Assembly (NCBI RefSeq): GCF_964194025.1
Contig: NC_134468.1
Span: forward strand, 71,114,001-71,178,000
DNA: 64,000 nucleotides
Reading direction: 5' to 3'
Source: Convolutriloba macropyga
Lineage: Eukaryota
Part shown: positions 1 to 62,400 of the stretch, piece by piece
How the letters are laid out: each line of letters begins with the position of its first letter
How positions within the stretch are numbered: position 1 is the first letter of the stretch
Notes under the pieces: model-generated
What the model saw: only the letters and a program-made list of their open reading frames with translations
What the model was told of the DNA's origin: nothing
The model's database searches: none
Made by a program: the position numbers and the translations under genes

Positions 1-183
1 TGCTGTACTGCACGATTCTGCCGAATGGTCCAGGATACTGTTAGATGTTACCAAATTTTCCCAGCTCATGTTTCATGGTTTAACTGGGTTAATCTTTTTT
101 GTTCTTATTAAACTTTTCCATCCTCAATTTTTCAAAAGACTAGACTGCTAATCATTTTTTGATATTGTAATCTAGAAAAAAGA

Positions 184-650
184 ATGTCTCTCGTTGTATT
201 TGATGTTGAGTGCTTGGAGGGGAAAATTGTTAAGGAGTTGGGTGTTTTCAAGGACGGAATTGTTTTGGGATTCAATTTCCTGCCACCCAAAGACTACCAA
301 CCTACTTTTCAAGCAAGGTGGAACACTAAAAATTTACATGGGATCAATTGGAGCAGTGGAAAACTGGAAAATATTGAGTTGTCATCAATCATTCACCATT
401 ATTGTTCACCTACAACAGAATACTTTGCGAAAGGTTTGGAGAAATGTAATCTCCTCTGAAATTACTTTTGTAAAGATGTGGAGAATCTAGATGATCTTGG
501 TTGTCCAAAAGTTTCCAAACTTCTCAACAATTTGGATACTGACTGGGATTGCAGCAACTATCCGTATCGACAGGAAAAATTTTTCACTGTGCAGAGAAGA
601 ACGCTTATGCTTTCGGAATTGGGACTCTTGATCATTTTGATAACGTATAA
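184..650 (+). pseudogene. Disrupted copy of the DEDD-like nuclease gene (left arm)
   Basis: Same sequence as 4301..4768, but with TCA>TGA at 457-459 and a 1-nt deletion near 575-585. It appears in the ORF track as 184..459 and 478..666. Confidence 0.9.
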
Positions 651-1249
651 TATTTTTAAATTCTAATTGTATTTGTGTTCGTTTTGTAATTAGTTTTTTT
701 TATTTTACTACTTTTTAAACCAGAGAAAGGTCGCATTGGAATATGTTTAGCTCGCTGCATATTATATGATGGCATAATAATGCTAGAAATTGACTAGTTT
801 TCAAAATAATAATAGAGATTTCTTTTGAAATTGGGAACCAAGAAATTTCAGTTTAAAAGGTCACAGTTAAATGAAATATTAAAAATTAATTTAAAAAACA
901 TTCGAAAGTTTCAAAAACTGGAGATTTGAAAAGGAGAAATATTTAAAAAACACAATTTTTATTGAGAACCTCATGTCAAAAACGATATTTTGAATCAACA
1001 TGTATTTAAAAAAAACCACTATAAAAAAATTTAATTGAACAAAAGTAGCTTAAAAACATCAAAAACTAACAAACCGAAAAAAAATCAATATACACGTTTT
1101 TTGTTTAAAACTTCATGTAATAAAAAACTGTACGTTTTTCTATGTTAAACAATGCAAGATAGTGCCTTAAAAATTTGTTTTAAACACAAAACAATAAAAA
1201 AAAATTAAAATGATAATGTATAAAGATTACGTATAGCCCATTTTACCTC

Positions 1250-1720
1250 AAATCCCAAAGACGTTCCTCACAGCATAATACCCAAGCTGTTCACGCGAGG
1301 GGGTTTAGCAAGATAATCCCTAAATATTAAATTAGTAAGGTCATTTACCCATTCCCATATTGCGCTTTAATAAGGTAAATTTCCAAAGACGTACCTGACA
1401 GCATGACACCCAAGCAGTTCACATAAAGGGGATCAGCAAGATAGTGCCGTAGCAACGAATCAGTAAGGTCGTTTACCCCTTACCATATTACACTTTAATG
1501 ATGTAAGTTTCCGAAGTCGTACCTCACGGCATGACACGCAAGCTGTTGACACGAGGGGGATTAGCAAGATAATCCCTTAATATTAAATTGGTAAGGTCAT
1601 TTACCCATTCCCATATTGCAGTTTACTAATGTAAATTTCCAAAGACGTGCCTCAGAGCATGACACCCAGGCTGTTCAAACGAAGGGGATTAGCAAGATAG
1701 TGCCTTAACAACAAATTTGT
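1250..1720 (-). repeat. 128-bp tandem repeat, ~4 units (left-arm mirror of 3230-3690)
   Basis: Reverse complement of the unit CTAATCCCCTTCGTGTGAACAGCTTGGGTGTCATGCTGTGAGG..., repeated four times. Confidence 0.9.
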
Positions 1721-1934
1721 TAGAATGAGTCATATGTTCACCAGAAGGAACTAGGGGTATTAGTAGGTATTAAAGAAACAGCGGGTATCCAACTGTTGGG
1801 ACATAAGCTAATTACTCAATATCATGGGTCTTTTATGAATTGGGTATATATTGAATTAGATATTTTATAGTAAAATTGTGAATTGGGTATATATTGAATT
1901 GGGTATTTTTATGTAAAATTTTGAATTTAATTAT

Positions 1935-3000
1935 TTTGTTTGAAAATGTTTTACTAAAATAGTTTTTAATCAAAGATTTCGTTTTCTACATAAGGTTTTT
2001 ATCGAAAAATGTAAATTTTAATGTTTTTTATTTTTCTATTTTTCCATTTTTCAGTTTTTGAAGTTTTTCCAATGTAAAATTTTCATTTTTATTGTTTTTT
2101 ATTAAAAAATATTGTTTTACTAAAATAATTTTTTTTTCAAAAATGTCGTTTTTTACATAAGAGTTAACAAAAAATGTAAATTTTGTTGTTTTTTGTTTTT
2201 CTATTTTTACATTTTTCAGTTTTTGAAGTTTTTCAATGCAAAATTTTTAAATTAATTTTTTTCATTAAAAAGTGTCGTTTTACTAAAATAATTTTTTTTC
2301 AAAAATGTCGTTTTTCATATAAGTTTTTTAACAAAAAATGTAAATTTTGTTGTTTTTTATTTTTCTATTTTTACATTTTTCAGTTTTTGAAGTTTTTTAA
2401 TTGAAAATTTTCAACATAATTATTTTTTTATTAAAAAATGTCGTTTTACTAAAATATTTTTTTTTCAAAAATGTCGTTTTTTACATAAGGTTTTTAACAA
2501 AAAATGTAAACTTTGCTGTTGCTTATTTTTCTATTTTTACAATTTTCACTATTTGGAGTTTTTTTTTCATGTAAAATTTTCAATTTAATTATTTTTTTCA
2601 TTAAAAAATTTTGTTTTACTAAAAAATTTTTCTTTCAAAAATGTCGTTTTTTACATAAGTTTTTTGACAAAAATTGTAAATTTTGTTGTTTTTTATTTTT
2701 CTATTTTTCCATTTTTCAAATTTTGAAGTTTTTCATTTACAATGAAAAAACTTCAAAAGCTGAAAAATGGAAAAATAGAAAAATAAAAAACAACAAAATA
2801 TACATTTTTGGTTAAAACCTTATGTAAAAAACGACATTTTTGAAAAAAACTATTTTAGTAAAACATCATTTTTTAAAGAAAAAAAAAATGGAAAAATAGA
2901 AAAATAAAAAACACTAAAATTTACATTTTTCGATAAAAACCTTATGTCGAAAACGAAATCTTTGATTAAAAACTATTTTAGTAAAACATTTTCAAACAAA
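1935..3000. repeat. AT-rich ~165-bp tandem repeats flanking the palindrome apex
   Basis: The marker AAAATGTCGTTTTT recurs at about 2141, 2302, 2468 and 2638. There are about 5 T-rich units before the apex and about 1.5 inverted A-rich units after it. Confidence 0.85.
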
Positions 3001-3229
3001 ATAATTAAATTCAAAATTTTACATAAAAATACCCAATTCAATATATACCCAATTCACAATTTTACAATAAAATATCTAATTCAATATATACCCAATTCAA
3101 AAGAGACCCATGATATTGAGTAATTAGCTTATGTCCCAACAGTTGGATAACCGCTGTTTCTTTAATACCTACCAATACCCCTGATTCCTTCTGGTGAACA
3201 TATGACTCATTCTAACAAATTTGTTGTTA

Positions 3230-3690
3230 AGGCACTATCTTGCTAATCCCCTTCGTTTGAACAGCTTGGGTGTCATGCTTTGAGGCACGTCTTTGGAAAT
3301 TTACATTAATAAACTGCAATATGGGAATGGGTAAATGACCTTACTAATTTAATATTAAGGGATTATCTTGCTAATCCCCCTCGTGTGAACGGCTTGCGTG
3401 TTATGCCGTGAGGTAAGACTTCGAAAACTTACATTATCAAAGTGTAATATGGTAAGGGGTAAACGACCTTACTGATTCGTTCTTAAGGCACTATCTTGCT
3501 TATCCCCTTTATGTGAACTGCTTGGGTGTCATGCTGTGAGGTACGTCTTTGGAAATTTACCTTATTAAAGCGCAATATGGGAATGGGTAAATGACCTTAC
3601 TAATTTAATATTTAGGGATTATCTTGCTAAACCCCCTCGCGTGAACAGCTTGGGTATCATGCTGTGAGGAACGTCTTTGGGATTTGAGGT
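3230..3690 (+). repeat. 128-bp tandem repeat, ~4 units, alternating variants
   Basis: The CTAATCCCC-like marker lies at 3243, 3371, 3499 and 3627, an exact 128-bp period. Confidence 0.92.
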
Positions 3691-4300
3691 AAAATGGGCT
3701 ATACGTAATCTTTATACATTATCATTTTAATATTTTTTTTTATTGTTTTGTGTTTAAAACAAATTTTTTAAGGCACTATCTTGCATTGTTTAACATAAAA
3801 AACAATGAAAAACGTACAGTTTTTTTTACATGAAGTTTTAAACACAAAACGTGTATATTGATTTCTTTTTTTTTCGGTTTGTTAGTTTTTGATGTTTTTA
3901 AACTACTTTTGTTCATTTAAATTTTTTTATAGTGAATTTTTTTAAATACACGTTGATTCAAAATATCGTTTTTGACATAAGGTTTTCAACAAAAATTGTG
4001 TTTTTTAAATTTTTCTCCTTTTCAAATCTCCAGTTTTTGAAGTTTTCGAATGTTTTTTAATTTAATTTTTAATATTTCATTTTACTGTGACCTTTTAAAC
4101 TGAAATTTCTTGGTTCCCAATTTCAAAAGAAATATCTATTATTATTTTGAAAACTAGTCAATTTCTAGCATTATTATGCCATCATATAATATGCAGCGAG
4201 CTAACCATATTCCAATGCGACCTTTCTCTGATTTAAAAAGTAGTAAAATAAAAACAATTAATTACAAAACGAACACAAATACAATTAGAATTTACAAATA

Positions 4301-4768
4301 TTATACGTTATCAAAATGATCAAGAGTCCAAATTCCGAAATCATAAGCTTTCTTCTCTGCACAGTGAAAAGTTTTTTCGTGTCGATACGGATAGTTGCTG
4401 CAATCCCAGTCAGTATCCAAATTGTTGAGAAGTTTGGAAACTTTTGGACAACCAAGATCATCTAGATTCTCCACATCTTTACACAAGTGATTTGAGAGGA
4501 GATTACATTTCTCCAAACCTTTCGCAAAGTATTCTGTTGTAGGTGAACAATAATGGTGAATGATTGATGACAACTCAATATTTTCCAGTTTTCCACTGCT
4601 CCAATTGATCCCATGTAAATTTTTAGTGTTCCACCTTGCTTGAAAAGTAGGTTGGTAGTCTTTGGGTGGCAAGAAATTGAATCCCAAAACAATTCCGTCC
4701 CTGAAAACACCCAACTCCTTAACAATTTTCCCCTCCAAGCACTCAACATCAAGTACAACGAGAGACAT
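4301..4768 (-). CDS. 155-aa DEDD/DnaQ-fold nuclease-like protein of Polinton-type elements
   Basis: Intact ATG-to-stop ORF. It has an N-terminal hydrophobic strand plus D-x-E (VVLDVE), KELGV, LPP, HGINW, AKGLEK, NLDDLGCP and a C-terminal C..H..HCA cluster. This pattern matches ExoI-like DEDD proteins; the fold is inferred from motifs only. Confidence 0.7.
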   Translation of the reverse strand: MSLVVLDVECLEGKIVKELGVFRDGIVLGFNFLPPKDYQPTFQARWNTKNLHGINWSSGKLENIELSSIIHHYCSPTTEYFAKGLEKCNLLSNHLCKDVENLDDLGCPKVSKLLNNLDTDWDCSNYPYRHEKTFHCAEKKAYDFGIWTLDHFDNV

Positions 4769-4800
4769 TCCTTTTTCTAGATTACAATATCAAAAAGTGA

Positions 4801-5130
4801 TTAGCAGTCTAGTCTTTTGAAAAATTGAGGATGGAAAAGTTTAATAAGAACAAAAAAGATTAACCCAGTTAAACCATGAAACATGAGCTGGGAAAATTTG
4901 GTAACATCTAACAGTATCCTGGATAATTCGGCAGAATCGTGCAGTACAGCAAGTAATCGAAAAACTTTCAATCTAGTAAAGAAAAAGTCAAGAAAGGAAC
5001 TTGCTTAACCAATAAGTCCTCCAAGAGGAAATTTTTGGTCATTTTAATCGGAATTTGTATTTTTGTCCCATATTTTACAGGCTGATAAAAAAGAGTTTTT
5101 GCGTTTTTCATTTTCGGGAAACCATGAAAG
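4801..5130 (-). pseudogene. Decayed phospholipase A2-like gene (viral/Polinton-type HD motif)
   Basis: One minus-strand frame reads FPLGGLIG*ASSFLDFFFTRLKVFRLLAVLHDSA (TAA at 5005-5007, HD at 4936-4941). This resembles the parvoviral-type YxGPG...HD spacing. The 3' part is mirrored at 1-151. Confidence 0.4.
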
Positions 5131-6379
5131 TATGTTTCCGTAACAATTGAATATGTTGACAAGAATGAAACTACCAAAAGATATGACTGGAACTACCACT
5201 TTTGGTAGTTACTTTTGGTGAGTTGAGCAAAAGATGAGATCTGGAAGCAGAAAATAAGAAAACCTGGATGAATAAGGGTAACTGAACAATGTAAGGGTAA
5301 AAAAACAAATGACTGAAATATCTTGAAAATTAACCTCGATATATCGAGCCAATGAAACTTAATTAAAACACAGAAGATTTGGGAACAAAAAACCTCGTAG
5401 CCAATAAGATCCTATAAAACATTTTGTTAAGTCAATGAAAGTTGTGTAGAAAATGATTTAGTGTTTATGTCATTTCTGTTTTTAGTATGGTCACGTGATG
5501 TTAGTAATGAGTTTTTCATTAGTCAAGTGAGGGAGAGTATAGCGAGGCATACCAGCAAGCTAGATTGTACTAAGGTTGGTTCCGACAGACTTTAGTGAAG
5601 TGTTTTTAACAGCCGACGCTTTCTGTACCTCTTCCATTGGATCTTGCTCAGTATCCGTAGAAAAACACGACAAGGGAGCTGTTTTGTCAAATTTTTTAAT
5701 GCCAAACTTGGGGTCAATTGCGTTTTCTTCTTCTCTATTTGCAATAAAATTCTCTGTCAGTGACACATTTTCCACTCGTCACAATCCTTATCAGGTTTCT
5801 GCAAATTTTCGAAGTCGTCAGACAAACACCAGAGGAATTTAAGTTCTCTCTCCTGCTCAGAAAATCCGAGTAAATTTTTATACATTGGTCTATAAGCAAA
5901 CTCATAGTCACAAAAACGGACGAATCTGCTTAGTTCCATGTTGTCTGAGACTTGTAAAGTTTTGTTTTCGATGTGGGTCGCATGAGTTCAATGACCCATA
6001 CAATACCTAGGTATCTGTAATTCGGTAATTGTGGTAATCATACGTCTTAGTTGACCTACATTTTGTTGAGCGGCTCCCTTGCAAGGATGAAATCACCTAA
6101 TTGTCCGTATTTGCGAAGACAGTATGACGTGATTTTTTTGGTATTAGGACTTAATTGATACATTTACGACTAAATTCTAACGATAGTGAAAAATTCCTGA
6201 TAAATTTGTGCTCATAAAACCTCTATCGATCACCTGAGAAGATTCGTTCTTACAAAGAAGATGTCAAAAATGATGTTTGTAAGATCACTAAATAATTGGA
6301 TTGACAGAATGAATTTAAATAAATACAGATGATGGCAAGTTGTATAATTTTTGATATATTTTGGATAAATATTTGATAA

Positions 6380-7310
6380 AATTTTGTTATATTGCTTATA
6401 ATTTAGGTGTTTTTCGACAATACTAAAGAAAATTGGGTAAAATTTGAGTATTTTTGACAAGATTCAGCTACTTTTGGTAAATATAAGTGGCAGGAATTGG
6501 ACAGTTTTTAATAGAATTTTTTCGGTTTTGATAGGAATTAGGTTTTTTTTTGGCAAAAATGTAGTTTTTTTTGGTAAGAAATGGCTATTTTCAACCTGTA
6601 TTGGTTAATTTCTTTTAAGGTTTTGGAAAGTGTTTGTCAGAATTGGGCATTTTTTTCAAGAATTGGGGATTTTTTTTATCAAGAATTGGGTATTTTGGCA
6701 AGAATTGGGCATTTTTAAGCAAGATTTTGATATTTTTTGGCAATAATTGGATAATTTTTCGTAATAATTGGCTTTTTTGGCAGCATTTGGGTACTTTTTA
6801 GCAAGTTTTGTGTAGTTTTTAGACAGAATTGTGTATTTTTTTAGCATCAATTGGGTAATATTTTTGCATTTTTTGGGTATTTTTTAGATAAAATTGGGTA
6901 TTTTTGGCATGATTTGTGTGTTTTTCTCAAGAATTCGATATTTTTAGCAAGAATTGGGTATTTTTGGCAGAAATTGTGTGTTTTTAGGCAAGAATTGTGA
7001 ATTTTTCGGCAATAATTGTATAATTTTCGATAGCATTTGTCTAATTTTTGGTACTTTTTAGCAAGTTTTGGGTATTTTTTAGACAGAATTCAGTATTTTT
7101 TGGCATGACATTGGTGTTTTTCAAGAGTTGGGTATTTTTTTAGCAAGAATTGGATATTTTTGGCAAGAATTGTGTATTTTTAAGCAAGAATTTGGTATTT
7201 TTTGGTAATAATTGGATAATTTTTGGTAACAGTTGTCTATTTTTGGCAAGAATTCGGTACTTTTTAGCAAGTTTTGGGTAATTTTTAGACAGAATTGGGT
7301 ATTTTTTTAT
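6380..7310 (+). repeat. Degenerate ~20-21-bp minisatellite (GGCAAGAATTGGGTATTTTT-like)
   Basis: Dozens of imperfect copies of AGAATTGGGTATTTTT in tandem. Confidence 0.9.
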
Positions 7311-7319
7311 CTACGCGGG

Positions 7320-8150
7320 ATAATATTATTAAGGAATTATCTTACTAATCTACTTCGTGTCAACGGCTTGGGTATCATGCTGTGAGGTACATTTTTGAAA
7401 ATCAAGTAAGCCGTACGTAACTGTAAATGAGTCACCCTATCTAATTTAATAATAAAACATTACCTAGCTTATCCCCTTTGTGTGAACAGCTTGGATATCA
7501 TACTGTGAGGTGCGTCTTTGGAAATTGACATTAGTGAAGTGTAATATGGGAATGGGTAATTGACCTTCTTATTTTGTTATTAAGGGATTATCTTGCTAAT
7601 CCCCTTCGTGGGAACAGCTTGGGTATCATGTTGTGAGGTACGTCTTTGGAAATTGACATTAGTAAAGTGTAATATGGTAGGGGGTAAATGACCTTACTGA
7701 TTTGTTGTTAAGGCACTATTTTGCTAATCCCCTTCGTGTGAACAGCTTGGGTGTCATGCTGTGAGGTACGTCTTTGGAAATTGACATTAGTAAAGTGTAA
7801 TATGGTAGGGGGTAAATGACCTTACTGATTTGTTGTTAAGGCACTATTTTGCTAATCCCCTTCGTGTGAACAGCTTGGGTGTCATGCTGTGAGGTACACT
7901 TTTGAAAATTTACATTATTAAAGTGCAATATGGTAGGGGGTCAATGACCTTACTGATTCGATGTTAAGGCACTATTTTGCTAATCCCCTTCGTGTGAGCA
8001 GCTTGGGTGTCATGCTGTGAGGTACATTTTTGAAAAGTCGTACGTAACTGTAAATGAGTCATCCTAAATTATTATTGAAGGATTATCTTGCTAATCCCCT
8101 TCGTGTGAACAGCTTGGGTATCATGCTGTGAGGAGGTACATCTTTGGAAA
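7320..8150 (+). repeat. Subterminal 128-bp tandem repeat array (~6-7 units)
   Basis: The CTAATCCCC marker lies at 7596, 7724, 7852 and 7980 (128-bp period), with partial units at both ends. It is the same family and orientation as 3230-3690. Confidence 0.92.
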
Positions 8151-8785
8151 TTGGAGGGTAGGAGGCTATACCTAATGTTAATACATAGGTACTTCCTTTT
8201 ACCCCCCCCCCCCCCCCCAGCTTTGCTTAATTATTACTACTCACTTATATCTATTTAATAATAAGTCACGGTCAGTTTAGTATTACGAAAATTATACAGA
8301 TCATTTATTTCTCTGGCTTGTTCCTCTTATAAATTCATGCTGATTGTCACATAGGCGTCCACATCCCACTTTTATCATTCGTCACCACTTACTTTGTGTG
8401 TGCATTGGAGCAACTTGTGACCACTAACATATTATTCAATATCTTGTCATGTGATCACAAAATCTACAAAATGTCTAAATTAAACAAAACTTCTTTGTGT
8501 CAAGCACGCGCTGAAATTCAGTGCTCAAGACGTGAAAAATTAGCAATTATAATTATTGAAAGCGCCAGCTAGTCAAATATTAAGCGCATTTATCATCTGT
8601 CAAAAGAGCTCAATAGAATGACAAGATGTTTGACAAGAGGTCAAATTATCCAGTATAATAATTTTTGATCTTTTCAGCTCTAGAAATCTGATCACAGGGT
8701 TAATGAGCGGGTCGAAACAGATTATTTATGCTAATACTAATATGTAATTTATGCATACTTATTTATACTAGGGGGAGCTACTAAC

Positions 8786-21400: not shown

Positions 21401-23609
21401 ATCAAAATTGATTTTATTAAGCTATTTTCATCTGGGTGTATATTGAGCCAAAATTTTTCCAATCTCAGACAAATTATGTAGTAAAAAACCATTTCTTGCT
21501 GCTTTCTTTAACTGGAACCAGCCGGTATTCGGGAGCTGAACAATCAAGGATGGATAATCGTTGGATTATGTTTAATAGATAGTGTAAAACCTTTTGTCAA
21601 ATAATTTTGATCATTTATGCGTGGTCGTTGTTTTGAAAATTTCGTCGAAATGAATGGATTAATTAAAAAATTGGATATGTGCCTCTTTTCCCCCATACCG
21701 CTACCTTTCATAGTCCCAATTGCAAATTATGTGTAGTTATATAAGTTACTATGTAAAAACAGCATGTTTGATCTGTGAAGGGAAGATTAGATCTGAACAG
21801 ACAACAGACTAACAAGTTTTGCTTAATGGCATCATAAAAACTATGCAACAAATCTCAAGTAAGCTAACACATAGCAATAAGATTTTCCTTTTCTCCCTGT
21901 TCTCTGATTACCTGAGCTAATGTCAACGCTACGTAACCATTTATTCCCCAATCTCCCCCCCAGACCAATTTAGTCCAAACTTATATTACTCATGTTCTCC
22001 AAGTCTGATTTTTTTCAACTTGTATTGCGAAGTCCTTCTATTCTTTCTTTTGCCTGTAAATTAACCATTTATTCTCATTCAACACATTAATCGGTTGACA
22101 ATTAGCAAGTATTAGTTACACACATCACCACAATACCGATAAGTTAACTTCAAAGGAACCCCAAAAAAGTTATAAAAGACAGAAAAATAAAAGATGGAAA
22201 CATTTTTTTCGAAAAACAAAGATCTTCACGTTCGAAAGAAAATTAATGGGTGAAAAGTTCAGATCGTAAGTTTTTTGATTATCATTTTTCAATATGCGTT
22301 TAATAATCCAAGTACACCAAATCGTAATACAATTTTGAGCAAAAAGGATTTTATTAAATTATTTTCATCTGAGTGTATTTTGAGCCAAAATTTTTCCAAT
22401 CACAGACAAATTATGTAGTAAAAAACCATTTCTTGCTGCTCCCTTTAACTGGAACCGGCCGGTATTCGGCAGCTGAACAATCAAGGATGGATAATCGTTG
22501 GATTATGTTTAACAGATAGTGTAAAACCTTTTGTCAAATAATTTTGACCATTTATGCGTGGTCGTTGTTTTGAAAATTTCGTCGAAATGAATGGATTAAT
22601 TAAAAAATTGGATATGTGCCTCTTTTCCCCCATACCGCTACCTCTCATAGTCCCAATTGCAAATTATGTTTAGTAATATAAGTTACTATGTAAAAACATC
22701 ATGTTTAATCTGTGAAGGGAAGAGTAGATCTGAACAGACAACTGACAAGTTTTGCTTAATGGCATCATAAAAACTATGCAACAAATCTCAGGTAAGCTAA
22801 CACATTGCAATAAGCTTTTCCTTTTCACCCTATTCTCTGATTACCTGAGCTAATGTCAACGCTACGTAACCATTTATTCCCCAATCTCCCCCCCCCCCCC
22901 AAACCAATTTAGTCCAAACTTATATTACTCATGTTCTCCAAGTCTGATTTTTTTCAACTTGTATTGCGAAGTCCTTCTATTCTTTCTTTTGCCTGTAAAT
23001 TAACCATTTATTTTCATTCAACACATTAATCGGTTGACAATTAGCAAGTATTAGTTACACATATCACGACAATACCGATAAGTTAACTTTAAAGTAACCC
23101 AAAAAAGTTATAAAAGACAGAAAAATAAAAGATGGAAAAATGTTTTTCGAAAAACAAACGAAGATCTTCACGTTTGAAAGAAAATTCATGGGCAAAAGGT
23201 TTAGATCTTAAGTTTTCTGATTATCATTGATCAATATGCGTTTAATAATCCAAGTACACGAAATCGTGATACAATTTTGAGCAAAATGGATTTTATTCAA
23301 TTATTTTCATCTGAGTGTATATTGAGCCAAAATTTTTCCAATCTCAGACAAATTATGTCATAAAAAACCATTTCTTGCTGCTTTCTTTAACTGGAACCAG
23401 CCGGTATTCGGGAGCTGAACAATCAAGGATGGATAATCGTTGGATTATATTTAATAGATAGTGTAAAACTTTTTTGTCAAATAATTTTGCTCTTTTATGC
23501 GTGGTCGTTGTTTTGAAAATTTCGTCGGAAAGAATGGATTAGTTTAAAAAATTGAATATGTGCCTCTTTTCCGCCATACCGCTACCTCTCATAGTCCCAA
23601 TTGCAAATT

Positions 23610-23642
<33 letters not shown>

Positions 23643-23679
23643 GCGAGGGCTTATCCACTCTTTCCAAACCCAAGAGTGG
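23610..23679 (-). other. LINE 3' end: stem-loop plus (CAT)11 tail
   Basis: Perfect 8-bp stem CCACTCTT (23655-23662) / AAGAGTGG (23672-23679) with a 9-nt loop, and (ATG)11 at 23610-23642. A stem-loop plus microsatellite tail is the known L2 3' recognition architecture. Confidence 0.85.
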
Positions 23680-23689
23680 TTGTTTATCA

Positions 23690-26455
23690 TCAGAAGGCTT
23701 GACAGAAAAGGTGAGTCTTCAGCAACTTTTTGAATTCTTCCAGAGTTTCTGCCATTCGAATGTACGCAGGCAACTCATTCCATTCCTTGGCTCCTTGGAA
23801 CCTGAAACATCTGCGAGCAGCTTCTGAAGTACAATTTGGTAGCATAAAAAGCCTCTGTCTGGAAGGGCATGCCGAATTCACATTTCTTTCGAAAAGTTCC
23901 CGCAAGTAAATAGGAGCGATGGCTCGGTCAACTTTGAACATACTGCATAATAACTTGAAAGTAATCCGTTGTTTAATGGGAAGCCAGTGTAACTTTTTCA
24001 GAGCTGACTTCGAAGACGAAAACTTCGCTAAACCGAAAACGAACTTTGCAGCTGAATTTTGAACTTTTTGAAGTTTTTGAATGAACTGCTTATCCAGTCT
24101 AGTATAGATAATATTGCAATAATCCAAGCATGGTGAAATGAAGCACGATACAAGTTCTTTGCGTTGTTTAATATCAATGAACCTTTTAACAGCATACAAT
24201 TTACGCAATTGAATATAACACTGTTGGCAGACTTTGTTGACCTGTTTTTCTAAGGTAAGATTTCTGTCAAAGTGTATTCCCAAAATTTTCACAGAACTTT
24301 TTATCAGTAGTTCAGTTCCAAATAGGACAAGCTTTTCAGGAGGTTTGAAACTGGACTTGCGGTTACTGAGAAAAATGATATCAGTTTTATTCTGGTTGTT
24401 GACAAGTTTCAACTTTTTCATCATTCCAATGGTACATTGAAGCAGATTGTCGATCTCATCTCTTCCTTGTTCATAGTCAAACATCAACTGACAATCATCT
24501 GCGTAAAAATGATATGAAACATTCATTTCATCTAGCAAAGTAAAAAGCGGAGTCAGATATAATGAAAACAACAAAGGGCCCAAAATAGACCCTTGCGGGA
24601 CACCAGAAGTGCTGATTAAACTTTCCGATAAACAATTGTCGATGAAGATTTGTGAGCTTCTATGTTTCAAAAAACTTTCGAAAAAATTCAGAACTATTCC
24701 ATCGAAGCCAAACTTGTTTTTGAGTATCATCAATAAAATGTCCAGATTAACTGTATCAAATGCCGAGGTCATATCCAGCGATATGACAACAGCAGGTTTC
24801 TTTTTGTTTAATATTTCAGACACTTTTTCCAAGCAATATAAAATACTTGATTCCGTTGAATGATTCTGGCGATAGGCTGACTGGAAGCGTGGCCATAATC
24901 CATTCTTGTTGAAGTATAATTTCATCTGAGAGAGTACATGACGTTCAATTATTTTAGAAAGTAGTAGTGTGTTCGTAACCGGTCGGTAGTTTCCAAGATC
25001 GTTCTCATCATCTTTCTTGTGTAAAGGGACTATAACTCCCGGCTTCAAGGAACTCGGGAAAACTCCATGGGATAATACACAGTTAAAAAGCTCCGTGAAG
25101 GTATCAGAGAAACGATTTATTAAAAATTTCAAACGAACTGCTGGTACAACATCATGTGGTGCTGTAGAATTCGATACATGATTAAGGCTTCTTTCAACTT
25201 CCAATTGACTCAGTAACAAAAATTCAGACCAATGGTGCTGACATGTAGGTTCAAAAAATGGGATAGAGTTGTCAAAACGCTGAAAAAGACGCGTAACCTT
25301 CTGCTGGAAAAATTCATTGAAGTCCCGGGATAAAACTATGGGATTCTGGTAATTGGGGAGTTTGTTGATTTTTCTTTTGAACAATTCATCAAAAGTGAGG
25401 TATCTCAATTTGCTAGATTCATTTTGGAGACGTTTTGAAAGAAACCCATCTCGTTTTTCCTTTAGAAGATCTCTGTAAAAATACAAGTGAGACTCAAAAC
25501 GAACTTCATTCTCAGTTGATGGATATTTTTTCAAGGTTCTCTCCAACTTTCTTTTTCGGCGATTGGCTTTGACACATTCAGAATCAAAATAGCGAGGGCG
25601 ATCGGAGTGCACTAGAAAACGTTTAAAAGGAACAATTTGATCCCTAGCGGTGGCAAGCTTATTGTGAACAATATCAAATACTCCATCGATAATTTCTGCA
25701 GAAGTATTACCATTAATTCCAGAGAGGGCACTATGAAACACATCATTAAAAATCTCAGCGTATTCATAATCGTTGACAGATTTCCAATGATAACCCATCC
25801 TGTACTTTGTCTCTTTCACAGGTCGTTCAATTTCAAAGTCGAATAATAGAGCAAAGTGATCCGAGGGCAGACTTTTGTCCAGAAATATGTCAACTGAAAT
25901 TTCTCTGTTCGTTATTACTAGATCCAGTTTGTTGCCATTTACTGACGTTGCTTCACTAGGACAGCAGAATAAACCAAACTCTTCAAGGAGAGAGTTGAAT
26001 TTCAGCTGAAATGAACCGTTCTTGTTTAACGGGATATTGAAGTCACCTAAGATAAAACAATTAAAATATTGAGGTAGGTACTTGGAAACTTGGTCGGAAA
26101 ACTGGTCGAAAAAAGAAGTTATTGATCCAGAAGGAGGCCGATAAATAATGATAAAAAGAAACGTTTTGCGATAGAACGTTATTCCAAGAGATAGAAATTC
26201 CAAATGCGCTTTGAATTTGTTTTTCAGGAAAAGAGTAATTCCACCACCACGTGAGCGTGTACGAAAGACGTGAAACGAAGAATATTTACGGCCAGCTATC
26301 AAATCAATACAGTGCTTCGTTGATTCTGATATCCAGGTTTCAGTGATAGCCAAGAACGCAAAGTTATTCAGCATCAAATATCGATGTAAAAGCTCAAACT
26401 TGTTGCATATGGACCTGGCATTCCAAAGACAGCCCTTGACCGAGTATGTATTTAG
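23690..26455 (-). CDS. LINE ORF2: apurinic-like endonuclease plus reverse transcriptase (open frame of 921 codons, no upstream ATG)
   Basis: APE motifs LWNARS, ITETW, YRPP, GDFN, LDLV and SDH. RT motifs YRPV, GVPQGSILGP and YADD. L2-like C-terminus LHWLP...FKKLLKTHLF. The frame is open from 26455, upstream of the track's TTG start at 26377. Confidence 0.93.
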   Translation of the reverse strand, partial: LNTYSVKGCLWNARSICNKFELLHRYLMLNNFAFLAITETWISESTKHCIDLIAGRKYSSFHVFRTRSRGGGITLFLKNKFKAHLEFLSLGITFYRKTFLFIIIYRPPSGSITSFFDQFSDQVSKYLPQYFNCFILGDFNIPLNKNGSFQLKFNSLLEEFGLFCCPSEATSVNGNKLDLVITNREISVDIFLDKSLPSDHFALLFDFEIERPVKETKYRMGYHWKSVNDYEYAEIFNDVFHSALSGINGNTSAEIIDGVFDIVHNKLATARDQIVPFKRFLVHSDRPRYFDSECVKANRRKRKLERTLKKYPSTENEVRFESHLYFYRDLLKEKRDGFLSKRLQNESSKLRYLTFDELFKRKINKLPNYQNPIVLSRDFNEFFQQKVTRLFQRFDNSIPFFEPTCQHHWSEFLLLSQLEVERSLNHVSNSTAPHDVVPAVRLKFLINRFSDTFTELFNCVLSHGVFPSSLKPGVIVPLHKKDDENDLGNYRPVTNTLLLSKIIERHVLSQMKLYFNKNGLWPRFQSAYRQNHSTESSILYCLEKVSEILNKKKPAVVISLDMTSAFDTVNLDILLMILKNKFGFDGIVLNFFESFLKHRSSQIFIDNCLSESLISTSGVPQGSILGPLLFSLYLTPLFTLLDEMNVSYHFYADDCQLMFDYEQGRDEIDNLLQCTIGMMKKLKLVNNQNKTDIIFLSNRKSSFKPPEKLVLFGTELLIKSSVKILGIHFDRNLTLEKQVNKVCQQCYIQLRKLYAVKRFIDIKQRKELVSCFISPCLDYCNIIYTRLDKQFIQKLQKVQNSAAKFVFGLAKFSSSKSALKKLHWLPIKQRITFKLLCSMFKVDRAIAPIYLRELFERNVNSACPSRQRLFMLPNCTSEAARRCFRFQGAKEWNELPAYIRMAETLEEFKKLLKTHLFCQAF

Positions 26456-27301
26456 TCAATTTGTAGTTACTTGCTGCCCAGAATTCACAGTCTTCAACCA
26501 AGCTCGTGCCTCATCGTTCAGGAAATACCTGCGCAAGATTATATTCTCTGGCCAGGTGTCACTACACTCCACAAGCTCCGTTTTATCATCAGGGAAAATA
26601 ATGTGAAAAGACTTCACTTGTTGGTTCCGACTCGGCTGTTCTCTGCACGCTAATGGATTCAAGTTTTGGTCATTACAGTACTTGAGAAGAGAGTCTGTAT
26701 CAACTGTTACCGGAACCCGGCTAACGAAGTAATGTTTGCGTGGTGGCAACTTCAGCTTAGGTTGAACTCCTTGGAATGTCGCATTTGTTTTATTGCCTTG
26801 AAATACAGCCACCTCATTTACAGACCGCTTCCGTTTTTTGGATCTGTCACTGGTTACGGAGAAGGCGCTATCCCTTCTGTTTTTGTGAATACCAAGGATG
26901 TTTCTTGCGGGATTTGTTTCAATTACTTTCTGAGCATAGGATGGTTTATGCCAAGGGTTAGACGGAGCTTCTACGATCTCATTTCCAGTGCAGACAGTGA
27001 AAACATCTTTATCATGTGATGCAATCAGTGCTTGTTTCACTTCAGTCACATCCGATTCAATTTTATCGAGCTTTTGCAATTTGAGATTCAATTGTAGCAC
27101 AAGATTTTTAATACTTAGCTTCGAACACTCGTCACAGATCCAGTTCACAGTTCCACTCACAGGCGTGTTGCTCACAAAATTGTCGCAGTTGTTGCACAGC
27201 CCTGCAGAAGCACACCACAAACACAGGGTTCGCCAAAGTTCTGGTGTCTCATTACAGCCGGAACAGGAAATCGGGAAATGGCCATTGCCATTACCCGTCA
27301 T
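26456..27301 (-). CDS. LINE ORF1, 281 aa: N-terminal PHD-like Cys-rich finger, coiled coil, C-terminal RRM-like domain
   Basis: CSGC...CLWC...CNNC...WICDEC, then a heptad-like segment, then YFVSRV...SFHI...WPENIILRRY, typical of CR1/L2 ORF1 proteins. Confidence 0.85.
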   Translation of the reverse strand: MTGNGNGHFPISCSGCNETPELWRTLCLWCASAGLCNNCDNFVSNTPVSGTVNWICDECSKLSIKNLVLQLNLKLQKLDKIESDVTEVKQALIASHDKDVFTVCTGNEIVEAPSNPWHKPSYAQKVIETNPARNILGIHKNRRDSAFSVTSDRSKKRKRSVNEVAVFQGNKTNATFQGVQPKLKLPPRKHYFVSRVPVTVDTDSLLKYCNDQNLNPLACREQPSRNQQVKSFHIIFPDDKTELVECSDTWPENIILRRYFLNDEARAWLKTVNSGQQVTTN

Positions 27302-29894
27302 TTGTATATGAAATTATGTGTAGTTATATAAGTTACTATGTAAAAACAGCATGTTTAATCTGTGAAGGCAAGAGTAGATCTGAACAGACAACTGACTAAC
27401 AAGTTTTGCTTAATGGCATCATAAAAACTATGCAACAAATCTCAGGTAAGCTAACACATAGCAATAAGCTTTTCGTTTTCACCCTATTCTCTGATTAGCT
27501 GAGCTAATGTCAACGCTACGTAACCATTTAATCCCCAATCCCCCCCCCAAACCAATTTAGTCCAAACTTATATGACTCATGTTCTCCAAGTCTGATTTTT
27601 TTCATCTTGTATTGTGAAGTCCTTCTATTCTTTCTTTTGCCTGTAAATTAACCATTTATTCTCATTCAACACATTAATCGGTTGACAATTAGCAAGTATT
27701 AGTTACACACATCACGACAATACCGATAAGTTAACTTTAAAGTAACCCAAAAAAAAGTTTATAAAAGACAGAAAAATAAAAGATGGAAAAATGTTTTTCG
27801 AAAAACAAACAAAGATCTTCACGTTCAGAAGAAAATTAATGGGTGAAAAGTTCAGATCGTAAGTTTTCTGATTATCATTCATCAATATGCGTTTAATAAT
27901 CCAAGTACATCAAATCGTGATAAAATTTTGATCAAAATAGAAAATGAAAATTTCAGATCTCGATTTCAAAAGCTCTCACTGCGCACCAATCTCCAATACA
28001 GTAAAAGTTGTCTTCAACACCAATCTCGGGTCATCGGGTTAAAATTGTTCAAAACAATCGAGAAAATTGGGACAGATACAAAAACAAGAGTTTCGATTGA
28101 CTAACCTTGTGATCATAAAAGAACAAAACCACAATAATGGCAATGCGGCTATCTTGGCGCGAGCAGTAAACTTGTTGTATCTATCAAATAAAACCATCAG
28201 TTCACAGCATCCAGGAAGCTAAGAGATCGAGAAAGAGTATATTCTACAGCATAACCAGCTTAACTAAATTACGTTCCCTAAAGGCAGTGGATCACATTCA
28301 ATTCTGACAAATGGATCATGATTACGAGAAAATTTATTTAAGTAACCAAAATTAAAATTTTAAATTCATACCCATTTCTGCTATTTCATTATCATCGTCT
28401 TGCATCATCTACAGAACGGTAAACTCGTGAAGTACTGCAGCGCACACTACCGAAGCTAACAAAAATCTTCAAAAAATAAGAATCAATATATTTCAAAAAA
28501 TAGCAAAATTTAATTAGTTTTTCCAGTTCCCGAACTGCTGACTACAGGGCGAAATGTCACAAGAACAATCACGAATGGACAGACAAAATAATAATAGACT
28601 GCTGTAGAAGGAAAACAAAACTTTATTGTTCCAAAACAAGTCACACTCCGAGCAATTAAATTGCCAATCACTATACAGCAGTTTATAATACTTAAGAGGA
28701 GCAAAAATTTAGCACCTTTAACCCTAAAATTATTGAACAATTGAAATAATATTTTGTCGAGCATGATTATTATCGCATGACTCGCGGACCGTGACGTAGG
28801 ATTTTTTTTACAATACCTTGTTAGACATGAGCAGAAGTTAGTCTGCCTCTTGAAATTAAGCCTTGAAAAACATCTCAAACATTAAATTTTCGAAAATTGT
28901 GCTATTTATAAACACGTACAGAACTGTCAATTGCCCTCAAATTATGGTCAAGTGAAAGTTGGGTCGACTCAAATTACATTATCAGAATTTATTATAAATG
29001 ATAAAAAAATTGCATGCAAAATTGAAGAGAATAGCGTATAAGAACTCGAAGAAACAAATAAAACCTTTTAAATAATACCTGCGCTTCCGAACTAGTAAAC
29101 ATTGGAAACTAAGCGTTCTCTTCAGACGTCTGAAATAATATTAGTGAGAAACTATGGACTCGCTGAAAAAGCCAATTGAAACAAAGGAACTACACGATTT
29201 TTCCTGATAAATTTTTTTGCACAAAAATTTTTGATTTGACTCTCAAATCCGAGGAACAAAAGCGAAATCGCTGGTAACAATTCAAATCTGCTCCACATTC
29301 AAAAACAAATTAACATAGCCGGTAGATTAGCAGACAAAATCTGTGAAATATACCGTAGAGAAAGCTTGTAGTAGTTATGACAACAAAGAGCAAAGACAGG
29401 AAAAATTATCCAAAATTGAGATTCAGAGATTCTGTCTAAAACAACTATTTAAATTTGACTTCTCAAATTTCGGCAAGACAAAAATGTGTGAACGGAATTT
29501 AAAATAGCCGTAGGAATTCTGCAAACAGTAGAAGCTGACCAAGTTAACTGGTGTCATTAAAATAAATATCAACTTCCGCGTGTAAAATGAACTCCGTGGA
29601 CTCAAAAGCTTGAAAATTCCGGAAATTATTCAAAAAAAATTGAAATTATTTTTTGAATCAAATTATGATTTTCTATTGTGCTCACATATGTACACCAACA
29701 TTGCTAAAAACTTCGCGCAAGTTGTTTTCTTATCAAAAATAGAAGTGGACCCGCCTACAAAAACAAATATTTGTGAGGCAGAAAAAATTCAGCTCAGACT
29801 GTGCGGACAGAACAGTTCCTGAAAGATCACAACATCAGCTATCCAGCACCAAGGAATTAAAAAGCATGTATCTTACTGCAATTAAAACTGAGCC

Positions 29895-60422: not shown

Positions 60423-62400
60423 TATAATAATAATAATAATAAATTCAAACAAATCATGGTTACCACCATCTTGGTTTTGCCCCACTTTGGGGAAGTTCAA
60501 TTTTATTAAGGTTTTCTAATGGATCCTATCCAGAAGGATAGCAGTAGTATTTAAACTTAGATATTGCTTCCGCCTCGAAGAATGTGGTCATTTCTCTTTG
60601 GAATGTATACCAGGAAAGATTGTAGGTGAATGAAAGCGCATTGTTATACTTAGCTACACGAACAAAAAACTTACTTTGCACCGCTTCCATCTAATTTCTC
60701 TAGCATAAATCAACACTTTGCCACTGGACATTGTATTGCAGTGGCGTGATTTGATATCCCAGAAATCAAGTGGATTCAGAATTGTCGGTTCGACAAGTAG
60801 TTTGTTCAACAGAAGATCTGAGAGGACCAGCTTGTACCCAATGGGCAAATAACCTTGGTTAATCAGACTTAAGCCATAGAGAGATTCCATTTTCTACAGA
60901 TCCAATTAACACATCTTCCGTGAACTTTCCCCAGACGCTGTAGTCTAACTTTACTGGGGAAACAAATATTTGATTCATAGTAGAGAACTGAAAGTAGATA
61001 ACTTTTTACAAGAAGACACTTAACATTCGCTTTTGTTTCAGCAGGCAAAACTCGTCGAATATGAGCTAGCTTCAGGAGACCTTTCTTTACAATAACGTCA
61101 AAGTGGAAGTCCTAAGAAAAGTTTTGAGAGAAATTTACGCCAAGATCTCTTATCGAATTTACCCGTTCATACTGATGTTCTCTTGCTTGAAATGAAAATA
61201 CTTGGGCAGAGCAATTCTGTAGAGAAAATTTCATATACTTGAACTTTGTGAAATTGAAACTCAAAGTTTTTTTCACTCCAAGTGGTAGCACTATCAATAT
61301 CATTTTGGGGAATTGTTTAATGGGTTTTTGAAACAACCATTTTTGTGTCGGCCGCAATAAAACTTTTCATTTAATAAAATTTCTGGTAAATCATTTATAC
61401 AAACCGAGAACTGAAACACTGTTGTGGTCCCTTGTGGTCGTCCACTGGTTAGGTTCACAAAATTCGAAGTAAAGTTTGAAAAAACTACTCGTTGTTGCGT
61501 ACCTAAAAGATACGATTTAACGAACAGGAGGAACTGTTTGTCAAAACCAAATTGAGAAAGTTTGTGGATGATAATTCTGAAGTTAATTGTGTCGAACGCT
61601 CCTGCTATAACAAGGAAACATATTGGTGTCTTTTTGCCCGCTAGCTCAGAATACAGTTTGTCGCAATAAACAAGCAGTTGAGTTATGGCTGATCGCCCAA
61701 TGCGAAAACCATGCTATTCGTCGCAGAGTTGGTTTTGAATCAGTTGTTTAAAATGTTTATACACCAATCTATCAAAAACTAATGACAAAGACGTAAGCAT
61801 CGCAATAGTTCGGTAGGATCAGAAAAACATTATATCTTAAAAATTGGCTTTGTTATTTATTTACGTAGTTCAATCAACGTGGTTCACTGAATCAATTACA
61901 AGCTCTACAACCCAGTAATAACAAGTTGATATAGGAATTTAAGATTTTAATTTCAACGTATAACTTTTGTGGTGCTGCAAAGATGTTTCGTAAACTGTAA
62001 CGCAGTCGAGATCAGATTTTTGTCAATCACTTAAAATTTGTGTGACATCTATGGTACAGCTATGGTACAGGACAATTAGCCCTACTAACATCAATGCCTC
62101 AATACATTTGACTGTACTAGTGGTTAAATATAGTAGACTCTTCTAAAAAACAAGGAGCATCGTAATTGAGTCAGCATACAAATTTTCAACCCATCTAATT
62201 TTATTTAAAGCTAACGTAAAGCTGTATATTCAAACAATGAACGCGCATGTCCACAAAAACACATGTACTTGAAAATAGTCTCCATTTAGTTTTCACTCAT
62301 ATTAGAAGAGTGGCCAGATTTACATTTTTCTAAGTTAGATTTCATAGCTTAAGTAGCTTCCATAGTAGAATAAGTTAGCTTCATCTTAATATCAACAAGC
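60423..62400 (-). mobile_element. Old, heavily decayed LINE (CR1-group) RT fragment
   Basis: Minus-strand remnants YRTIAMLTSLSLVFDRLV (~61760-61815), HGFRIGRSAITQL (~61675-61713), GRPQG...INDLP (~61385-61445) and IRDLGVNF (~61130-61153). A short (TAA)n tail lies at ~60423-60442. The right boundary is uncertain. Confidence 0.75.

What the first reader, a model, noticed from the sequence alone, without database searches (positions are those of the whole stretch)
26377..26461. LINE ORF1 and ORF2 joined in frame by a single leaky-context stop (UGA-CUA): candidate programmed readthrough
Seen: the minus strand reads ...ACA AAT TGA CTA AAT ACA TAC TCG GTC AAG GGC TGT CTT TGG AAT GCC AGG TCC..., so ORF2 continues in ORF1's frame directly after the TGA at 26458-26456. 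Endonuclease motif I (LWNARS) lies upstream of the first in-frame ATG (26374), so ATG initiation would truncate the enzyme. ORF2 itself ends in a triple stop, TGA TGA TAA (23692-23684). Known: UGA-CUA is the readthrough context of Sindbis-type alphaviruses and of several animal genes, whereas characterised LINEs use reinitiation or translational coupling. Inferred: a 1203-aa ORF1-ORF2 fusion is made by readthrough, a gag-pol-like strategy in a non-LTR element.
Basis: partly seen in the sequence, partly recalled or inferred. Interest (0 to 1): 0.78.

Follow-up and report, generated by a model that had tools for sequence, protein, structure and literature searches.

The report
Jumping gene reads through stop
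A young jumping gene (a CR1-type LINE) has its two genes in one reading frame, split only by the leaky stop signal TGA-CTA; this six-letter signal is kept in every deeply diverged relative examined, so its copying enzyme is probably made by occasionally reading past the stop, a strategy known from retroviruses but not from this class of element.

Summary
On the minus strand, ORF1 (27301-26459, 281 aa) ends at TGA 26458-26456. CTA follows, and an endonuclease/reverse-transcriptase ORF2 (921 codons) runs on in the same frame to TGA TGA TAA. The copy is one 1203-codon frame with a single stop. The first in-frame ATG lies after the catalytic Asn motif.

The stop is not a copy-specific mutation. 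About 14 diverged lineages in this genome (ORF1 identity down to 21-29%) and 8 contigs from other public assemblies all have a single in-frame TGA followed by C. The next codon is CTA in most, CTC in three, and CCA or CAA in one each. Information content is 2.0, 2.0, 2.0, 2.0, 1.66 and 1.46 bits at these six positions and at most 0.63 bits at the 30 flanking positions.

Controls point the same way:
- ORF2 terminal stops are mixed (TGA, TAA, TAG).
- Synonymous codons at conserved residues are scrambled.
- No conserved AUG, downstream RNA structure, SECIS or 2A motif is present.
- More distant PHD-ORF1 LINEs use overlapping frames instead.

Best reading: programmed UGA-CUA readthrough giving an ORF1p-ORF2p fusion, at about 0.7. 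This is comparative evidence only; no protein or ribosome data exist. The scan had already noted the same arrangement on other DNA of this genome (s1-200755 and others).

The parts
23609..27313 (-). Full-length CR1-type LINE copy, about 3.7 kb. The 5' leader before the ORF1 ATG is only about 9-12 nt.
   Evidence: 98.2% identity over 3722 nt to a second copy at G000 C11:2988729-2992450. Contigs of four public runs break away at 27311-27315. A possible target-site duplication ATAATTT sits at 27317-27311 and 23611-23605 (seen by eye).
26459..27301 (-). ORF1, 281 aa: Cys/His zinc finger (PHD-like), coiled coil, disordered basic linker, then a C-terminal RRM-like domain.
   Evidence: AlphaFold2 model: helix 64-95 and a beta-alpha-beta domain at 188-273 with pLDDT above 90. 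The best Foldseek matches are RRM domains. Relatives' ORF1s carry PHD or PHD_Pygo Pfam hits. The query itself has no Pfam hit.
26453..26458 (-). Candidate readthrough signal: TGA (26458-26456) followed by CTA (26455-26453).
   Evidence: Across 16 lineage representatives the information content is 2.0, 2.0, 2.0, 2.0, 1.66 and 1.46 bits, against at most 0.63 bits in the flanks. The hexamer is unchanged in contigs of four sequencing runs, including variants at about 93% identity.
26423..26452 (-). Unconserved linker of 10 codons (NTYSVKGCLW) between the CTA codon and the catalytic Asn codon (AAT, 26422-26420). It contains no ATG.
   Evidence: Counting from the CTA codon, the linker length varies from 9 to 29 codons between lineages and is always in frame.
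23693..26455 (-). ORF2, 921 codons, in the ORF1 frame. The AP-endonuclease is at about 25850-26425 and the reverse transcriptase at about 24269-25021. The C-terminal domain carries the HWLPI motif.
   Evidence: Pfam Exo_endo_phos (residues 11-200), Exo_endo_phos_2 and RVT_1 (residues 479-729). Translation.
23684..23692 (-). ORF2 terminator TGA TGA TAA.
23609..23683 (-). 3' UTR with an 8-bp inverted repeat (CCACTCTT, 23679-23672, and AAGAGTGG, 23662-23655), followed by a (CAT)n microsatellite tail at about 23642-23609.
   Evidence: Sequence. The inverted repeat was seen by eye and not folded.

Best explanation
This is an intact, recently active CR1-lineage LINE. Its ORF1 is of the zinc-finger plus coiled-coil plus RRM kind (type IIIB of Metcalfe & Casane). 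Its endonuclease/reverse-transcriptase is expressed by programmed stop-codon readthrough.

Most ribosomes terminate at UGA and release ORF1p. A small fraction decode the UGA with a near-cognate tRNA, because the 3' context C-U-A weakens termination. Those ribosomes continue in frame through a short linker into ORF2 and make a fusion of about 1203 aa. Six nucleotides would therefore set the ORF1p:ORF2p ratio, as the gag stop does for gag-pol in some retroviruses. The fusion could join ORF1p multimers on its own RNA through the shared coiled coil.

Shown: the anatomy, the frame relation, and the nucleotide-level conservation of TGA-CTA against several controls.

Inferred: that readthrough actually occurs, its efficiency, and the behaviour of the fusion protein.
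For: 1. There is a single in-frame TGA in 1203 codons. The catalytic Asn motif lies 5' of the first AUG.

2. All related lineages have ORF1 and ORF2 in one frame, split by one stop that is always TGA. This holds for about 14 lineages in this genome with ORF1 identity 21-57%. It also holds for 8 contigs from other assemblies. Four of these were tested against this genome: two have at most 67-72% nucleotide identity to anything in it, and two have essentially no DNA match.

3. Position +4 is C in every case. The next codon is CTA in most, CTC in three, and CCA or CAA once each. Information content peaks only at these six positions.

4. Controls:
- ORF2's own stops in 10 lineages are TGA x4, TAA x5 and TAG x1, mostly followed by T.
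- Conserved Leu, Arg and Ser columns of ORF1 use scrambled synonymous codons.
- CTA is only 11-16% of Leu codons.
Selection therefore acts on the nucleotides, not on a Leu residue.

5. Linker length varies from 9 to 29 codons and always stays in frame. An in-frame ATG before the catalytic Asn exists in only 4 of 15 lineages. One lineage lacks even near-cognate starts.

6. The last sense codon, which sits in the P site at termination, is not conserved. This argues against restart mechanisms that depend on the P-site tRNA.

7. UGA-CUA is an experimentally established readthrough context. It gives 1.5% readthrough on its own in HEK-293T cells and more with further context, and it is used by alphaviruses (PMC4132726).

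8. Fusions appear to be tolerated. Sporadic copies carry TGG, TGT, CGA or TCA followed by CTA. Single-ORF PHD-APE-RT elements exist in CR1 and L2 (PMC4120745).

9. More distant PHD-ORF1 LINEs use a different junction. ORF1 ends in TAA or TAG and ORF2 overlaps in another frame. TGA-CTA is therefore a clade trait, not a genome-wide bias.

10. The family is young (98-100% identical copies). Elements with this junction therefore do transpose.
Against: - There is no direct evidence of translation across the stop. No RNA, ribosome-profiling or proteomic data were available.
- No stimulatory 3' structure was found. If the host behaves like human cells, efficiency may be only about 1-2%.
- There is a cautionary precedent. 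The in-frame gag-UGA-pol junction of Candida Tca2 was predicted to be read through, but reporter assays found no readthrough (PMC2194720; PMC7175516).
- LINE-1 ORF2 can be translated without an AUG by termination-reinitiation (review PMC5972666). A restart right at the stop would therefore also keep the frame.
- Four lineages do have an AUG just before the catalytic Asn.
- Lineage counts are not fully independent, because the lineages share ancestry.
Confidence: 0.7

Rival explanations
1. Termination followed by AUG-independent restart. All ribosomes terminate at UGA and release ORF1p. A fraction stay on the mRNA and resume at or next to the CUA codon, making a separate ORF2p. This would resemble the unconventional termination-reinitiation of LINE-1.
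For: LINE-1 ORF2 translation needs no AUG and depends on ORF1 translation (PMC5972666). A restart exactly at the stop would also explain why the frame is kept and why no AUG is present. Four lineages carry an AUG close to the endonuclease start.
Against: Reinitiation does not predict an invariant UGA with a C-U-A context, which are the hallmarks of weak termination. The P-site codon is not conserved. No overlapping stop-start such as UAAUG, and no downstream structure as in SART1, is present. ORF2 starts only 9-29 codons before its catalytic Asn, with no conserved start codon.
Confidence: 0.15
2. The hexamer TGACTA is conserved for a reason other than decoding. It could be a binding site on the RNA or DNA, for example for packaging, an internal promoter or an AP-1-like site. 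ORF2 would then be expressed in some other way, such as from a subgenomic or processed RNA.
For: TGACTCA/TGACTAA resembles an AP-1/GCN4 half-site (my own knowledge). The element has almost no 5' UTR, so internal regulatory sequences are plausible.
Against: A sequence motif alone does not explain three things. It always sits in frame as a stop codon exactly at the ORF1-ORF2 boundary. It is the only stop in 1203 codons. The linker indels are all multiples of three.
Confidence: 0.05
3. The stop is removed at the RNA level, for example by A-to-I editing of UGA to UGG, or it is decoded as selenocysteine.
For: UGA is the only stop codon that either mechanism could recode in this way. Sporadic genomic copies carry TGG.
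Against: No SECIS or other Rfam element is present in the element. No conserved double-stranded structure surrounds the site. The 5' neighbour of the A is G, which ADARs disfavour (my own knowledge). Neither mechanism explains the conserved CUA.
Confidence: 0.03
4. A copy-specific nonsense mutation in an element that is normally single-ORF.
For: A few relatives have a sense codon at this position (L050, L058, L071, L102, L103).
Against: Those copies are the exceptions inside families whose other copies carry TGA. All about 22 lineages sampled have TGA.
Confidence: 0.01

Closest known systems
Gag-pol readthrough in gammaretroviruses (MuLV) and nsP3/nsP4 readthrough in alphaviruses (Sindbis-type UGA-CUA)
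   Same: A single in-frame leaky stop separates an abundant upstream protein from a scarce polymerase. In the alphavirus case and in vertebrate OPRL1, OPRK1, AQP4 and MAPK10 the hexamer is the same UGA-CUA (PMC4132726).
   Different: The host here is a non-LTR retrotransposon. It has no protease to separate the fusion and no 3' pseudoknot or stem-loop. Position +7 is never G in this genome's lineages, unlike the vertebrate CUAG.
LINE-1 unconventional termination-reinitiation and SART1 UAAUG translational coupling
   Same: These are bicistronic LINE RNAs in which ORF2 translation depends on ribosomes that have translated ORF1. In LINE-1, ORF2 needs no AUG (PMC5972666).
   Different: Those junctions have a 63-nt spacer with stops (L1) or an overlapping stop-start plus a downstream structure (SART1), and they give separate proteins. 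Here ORF2 follows one stop directly in frame, with a conserved weak-termination context.
2A 'StopGo' recoding in APE-type LINEs (L1Tc, sea-urchin and other invertebrate elements)
   Same: Translational recoding is used by non-LTR retrotransposons to make two products from one frame. A relative found here, P0010, carries DIHPNPGP ahead of its endonuclease.
   Different: No NPGP motif occurs at this junction. The recoding signal here is a stop codon context, not a peptide.
CR1-lineage LINEs with type IIIB ORF1 (PHD + RRM; CR1 subgroup 4 of Metcalfe & Casane 2014, PMC4120745)
   Same: The ORF1 architecture matches, as do the APE-RT ORF2 with an HWLP-type C-terminal domain and the 3' hairpin with a microsatellite tail. 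The nearest named ORF2 homologues are bird CR1-like proteins.
   Different: That paper does not discuss the ORF1-ORF2 junction. Whether its subgroup 4 members share TGA-CTA was not testable here.
Candida albicans Tca2 (LTR element) gag-UGA-pol
   Same: An in-frame single UGA lies between the structural and enzymatic ORFs, and it was predicted to be read through.
   Different: Reporter assays found no readthrough for Tca2 (PMC2194720). Tca2 also lacks the UGA-CUA context and the deep comparative conservation shown here. It stands as a warning that the inference needs a bench test.

Membership tests
APE-type non-LTR retrotransposon (LINE), CR1 lineage | ORF2 with an AP-endonuclease followed by a reverse transcriptase | tested here: met
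   Pfam Exo_endo_phos, Exo_endo_phos_2 and RVT_1.
APE-type non-LTR retrotransposon (LINE), CR1 lineage | RT/APE phylogeny places the element in the CR1 clade against reference elements | tested here: inconclusive
   No Repbase reference set was available. The nearest named homologues are bird (CR1-only genomes), psyllid, limpet and medaka RT proteins at 22-35% identity over their best local alignments.
APE-type non-LTR retrotransposon (LINE), CR1 lineage | Type IIIB ORF1: PHD finger plus RRM | tested here: met
   The AF2 model shows an RRM-like fold with RRM structures as top matches, at weak E but TM 0.63-0.67. A Cys/His finger is conserved in the alignment. ORF1 relatives carry PHD or PHD_Pygo Pfam hits. 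The query itself has no Pfam hit.
APE-type non-LTR retrotransposon (LINE), CR1 lineage | 3' end with a short hairpin and a microsatellite tail rather than poly(A) | tested here: met
   An 8-bp inverted repeat and a (CAT)n tail are seen. The hairpin was seen by eye and not folded.
Programmed stop-codon readthrough, UGA-CUA context type | A single in-frame stop with coding sequence continuing in the same frame | tested here: met
   One TGA in 1203 codons. The frame is conserved in all lineages.
Programmed stop-codon readthrough, UGA-CUA context type | UGA followed by CUA, conserved at the nucleotide level across relatives | tested here: met
   with controls.
Programmed stop-codon readthrough, UGA-CUA context type | The downstream product cannot be made by ordinary initiation | tested here: met
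   The catalytic Asn lies 5' of the first AUG. There is no in-frame AUG in 11 of 15 lineages.
Programmed stop-codon readthrough, UGA-CUA context type | A readthrough (fusion) protein or footprints across the stop have been demonstrated | not testable with these tools
   No RNA or ribosome-profiling runs were found.
Termination-reinitiation / translational coupling (SART1, caliciviruses) | Overlapping or adjacent stop and AUG (UAAUG, AUGA), with a helper structure or an 18S-complementary motif | tested here: not met
   No AUG lies at or next to the stop in any lineage. There is no downstream structure. 18S complementarity was not tested.
2A StopGo recoding | A D(V/I)ExNPGP motif at the junction | tested here: not met
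   Absent from the ORF1 tail and the linker.
Selenocysteine recoding | A SECIS element in the transcript | tested here: not met
   An Rfam scan of 22500-28500 at E up to 1 gave only two chance-level hits and no SECIS.

The most novel reading that the evidence does not exclude
A whole, ancient subclade of CR1-type LINEs, present in this animal and in several other organisms, makes its endonuclease/reverse transcriptase only as an ORF1p-ORF2p fusion through UGA-CUA readthrough. This would be the first gag-pol-like stop-codon recoding in non-LTR retrotransposons. A bare six-nucleotide signal would set RNP stoichiometry and perhaps enforce cis-preference.
Probability: 0.6. Interest if true: 0.8.

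Novelty: new variant of a known kind. Interest (0 to 1): 0.7.

Why it matters
How LINEs translate ORF2 from a bicistronic RNA is a long-standing question. The known answers are few and idiosyncratic: L1 reinitiation, SART1 coupling, 2A peptides and the HeT-A frameshift.

A LINE clade that uses the classic viral UGA-CUA readthrough signal would add a further strategy. It would also give non-LTR elements a true gag-pol analogue, without a protease. It would offer a very small and easily mutated handle, six nucleotides, for testing how the ORF1p:ORF2p ratio and a physical ORF1-ORF2 linkage affect RNP assembly and cis-preference.

There are two further uses. It is a natural series of UGA-C contexts (CTA, CTC, CCA, CAA) for studying readthrough in a non-model animal. 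It also warns annotators that these elements are mis-called, either as two genes or under a TGA=Trp code.

Tried and rejected
- **Downstream RNA structure.** The MFE z-score is +0.43 for the 159 nt starting at the TGA in this copy. It averages about 0 for 60 and 120 nt in 15 lineages. No structure is involved.
- **SECIS or other Rfam families.** None found.
- **Copy-specific nonsense mutation.** Rejected.
- **Amino-acid-level selection for Leu.** Rejected by codon-usage and synonymous-site controls.
- **A genome-wide preference for TGA stops.** Rejected by the ORF2 terminal stops.
- **Expression evidence.** The run search found no RNA runs. Laying contigs showed only that the DNA, with TGACTA unchanged, is present in four runs from two studies.
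- **A contrast set of other LINE clades from this genome.** The contrast came instead from three external distant relatives.
- **The JGI metagenome scan.** It gave a single locus.
- **Literature.** Six completed full-text searches, of seven attempted, and six papers were checked. No report of readthrough in a LINE was found. This is absence within the held library only.
- **Organism name.** It is withheld by the tools, so I did not pursue it.
Full report
**1. Observation**

- ORF1 runs 27301-26459 (281 aa, ATG start) and ends at TGA 26458-26456.
- The next codon is CTA. The same frame stays open for 921 codons to TGA TGA TAA at 23692-23684.
- The whole 1203-codon frame contains one stop, the TGA.
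- ORF2 matches Pfam Exo_endo_phos, Exo_endo_phos_2 and RVT_1.
- The first in-frame ATG (26374) lies 27 codons past the stop. It is 3' of the LWNARS motif that holds the catalytic Asn, so AUG initiation would truncate the endonuclease.

**2. What the element is**

The copy spans about 27313 to 23609 on the minus strand.

- It is 98.2% identical over 3722 nt to a copy on another chromosome. Five copies at 94-100% identity share the junction.
- Contigs from four public runs diverge at 27311-27315. The family's 5' end is therefore only about 9-12 nt before the ORF1 ATG.
- The 3' UTR has an 8-bp inverted repeat and a (CAT)n tail. This is the usual CR1/L2-style end.
- ORF1 has no Pfam match. Alignment of 14 lineages shows a conserved Cys/His finger.
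- An AlphaFold2 model built from that alignment adds a long helix and a confident C-terminal beta-alpha-beta domain. Its best structural matches for that domain are RRMs.
- ORF1s of relatives carry PHD or PHD_Pygo hits.
- This corresponds to ORF1 'type IIIB' (PHD + RRM), reported only from the CR1 lineage (PMC4120745).
- The nearest named ORF2 homologues are bird, psyllid, limpet and fish RT proteins at 22-35% identity over their best local alignments.

**3. Is the stop a property of the family?**

A six-frame search of the window's own 1.18-Gb genome with ORF1 gave 141 matches. I examined 72 loci.

- They fall into about 14 lineages. Among the aligned full-length ORF1s, identity to this copy is 21-57%.
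- ORF2 N-terminal identities are about 25-50%.
- In every copy without an obvious indel, ORF2 is in the ORF1 frame.
- The two ORFs are separated by one stop, and that stop is always TGA.
- The next codon is CTA in ten lineages, CTC in two sister lineages and CCA in one.

A profile search with the ORF1 alignment found 2860 relatives among 1.84 billion representative proteins. Contigs encoding some of them come from nine other ENA or SRA accessions and one GenBank contig.

| Junction | Contigs |
|---|---|
| TGA CTA | six |
| TGA CTC | one |
| TGA CAA | one |
| Sense variants in decayed copies (TGG AAA; TCA CTA) | two |

Four of these external contigs were tested against this genome. Two have at most 67-72% nucleotide identity to anything in it. 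Two have essentially none. They therefore come from other organisms.

On an ORF1 tree, path lengths inside the TGA clade reach about 4.5 substitutions per site.

**4. Is the conservation at the nucleotide level?**

Across 16 representatives, information content is 2.0 bits at T, G, A and +4 C. It is 1.66 bits at +5 and 1.46 bits at +6. It is at most 0.63 bits at each of the 15 positions before and the 15 positions after. Three controls follow.

- ORF2's own terminators in ten lineages are TGA x4, TAA x5 and TAG x1, mostly followed by T.
- Invariant Arg, Ser and Leu columns of ORF1 use four to six scrambled codons. Synonymous sites are therefore saturated at this depth.
- CTA is only 11-16% of Leu codons in these ORFs, and no lineage has TTR, CTG or CTT after the stop.

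Copies in which the stop has mutated (TGT, CGA, TGG, TCA) still carry CTA. They sit inside families whose other copies have TGA. These are post-insertion decay.

**5. How ORF2 could start**

- Counting from the CTA codon, the linker to the catalytic Asn is 9-29 codons long. It is unconserved in sequence and always a multiple of three.
- An in-frame ATG occurs in 4 of 15 lineages. One lineage lacks even near-cognate codons.
- The last sense codon of ORF1 is not conserved.
- No 3' structure is present. There is no SECIS and no 2A motif.

The only conserved feature is a UGA in the weakest known termination context. UGA-CUA alone supports 1.5% readthrough in human cells, and far more with additional context. 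It is the alphavirus signal (PMC4132726).

**6. Contrast group**

Three more distant PHD-ORF1 LINEs (profile E about 1e-12 to 1e-15) end ORF1 in TAA or TAG. Their ORF2 lies in a different, overlapping frame, and one has an AUG in the overlap. The in-frame TGA-CTA junction is therefore a derived or ancestral trait of one subclade. It is not a general feature of such elements or of this genome.

**7. Interpretation**

The most economical explanation is programmed readthrough, yielding mostly ORF1p and a minority of ORF1p-ORF2p fusion. Fusions are plausible products. Single-ORF PHD-APE-RT elements exist in CR1 and L2 (PMC4120745), and sense-codon variants occur here.

The main rival is termination followed by AUG-independent restart at the stop, by analogy with LINE-1 (PMC5972666). 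It explains the frame. It does not explain the invariant UGA-C(UA) or the unconserved P-site codon.

One caution applies. The in-frame gag-UGA-pol junction of Tca2 failed a reporter test (PMC2194720). A bench test is therefore required.

**8. Novelty**

Six completed full-text searches and six papers were checked. They included two recoding/reinitiation reviews and two CR1-focused papers. None reports stop-codon readthrough for any LINE.

The reviews list the known mechanisms for non-LTR elements: SART1 coupling, L1 reinitiation, 2A StopGo and the HeT-A frameshift. I rate this a new variant of a known kind: a known element class combined with a known recoding signal in a new way.

The scan had already flagged the same arrangement elsewhere in this genome (s1-200755, with a follow-up reporting at least fourteen kinds; also s1-208282, s1-217477 and s1-214694). 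My lineage count and conclusion were reached independently, and they agree.

**9. Limits**

- No expression or translation data exist.
- The organism names of all sources are hidden.
- Lineages share ancestry, so counts are not independent events.
- RT-based clade placement was not done against reference elements.

Noticed in passing
P0010 (ENA protein, ORF2 relative at about 31% identity), residues about 68-78: A CR1/L2-like ORF2 relative carries a 2A-like 'DSGDIHPNPGP' StopGo motif in an N-terminal extension about 100 residues upstream of its endonuclease. Related LINEs therefore use a different recoding trick.
   Followed up: no
L094:1233-1255, L098:around 909, L099:1064-1116: More distant PHD-ORF1 LINEs from other sequencing runs end ORF1 in TAA or TAG. 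Their ORF2 is in another frame and overlaps the ORF1 end, and L094 has an AUG in the overlap. This contrasts with the in-frame TGA-CTA junction.
   Followed up: partly
L100:601-1749 and L101:601-1185 (ENA contigs): Public gene calls for these eukaryotic contigs do not translate under the standard or bacterial code. They were evidently called with TGA=Trp, which hides the ORF1-TGA-ORF2 junction as a 'W' inside a fused protein.
   Followed up: partly
L050, L058, L071 (this genome); L103 (JAAUXW010270067.1); L102: Individual copies have a sense codon in place of the stop. Four are TGT, CGA, TGG or TCA, each still followed by CTA. L102 has TGG AAA. They give uninterrupted ORF1-ORF2 frames.
   Followed up: partly
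window 27311-27317 and 23605-23611: A possible 7-bp target-site duplication (ATAATTT) flanks the element. The 5' leader before the ORF1 ATG is only about 9-12 nt, which leaves no room for a conventional 5' UTR promoter.
   Followed up: partly
window 23655-23679 and 23609-23642: The 3' UTR has an 8-bp inverted repeat (CCACTCTT / AAGAGTGG) followed by a (CAT)n tail whose length differs between copies.
   Followed up: no
junction position +7 in 16 lineage representatives: The base after CTA is A, C or T and never G in this genome's lineages. This is unlike the vertebrate UGA-CUAG motif. One external element (L097) does have CTA G.
   Followed up: no
window 61426-61818 (minus strand): A fragment of a different reverse transcriptase, 32% identical to residues 489-623 of this ORF2. 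It is another, unrelated LINE remnant.
   Followed up: no
window 1-8241: Earlier scan notes describe a Polinton-like fold-back element with a DEDD-like nuclease gene at the start of this window. I did not examine it.
   Followed up: no
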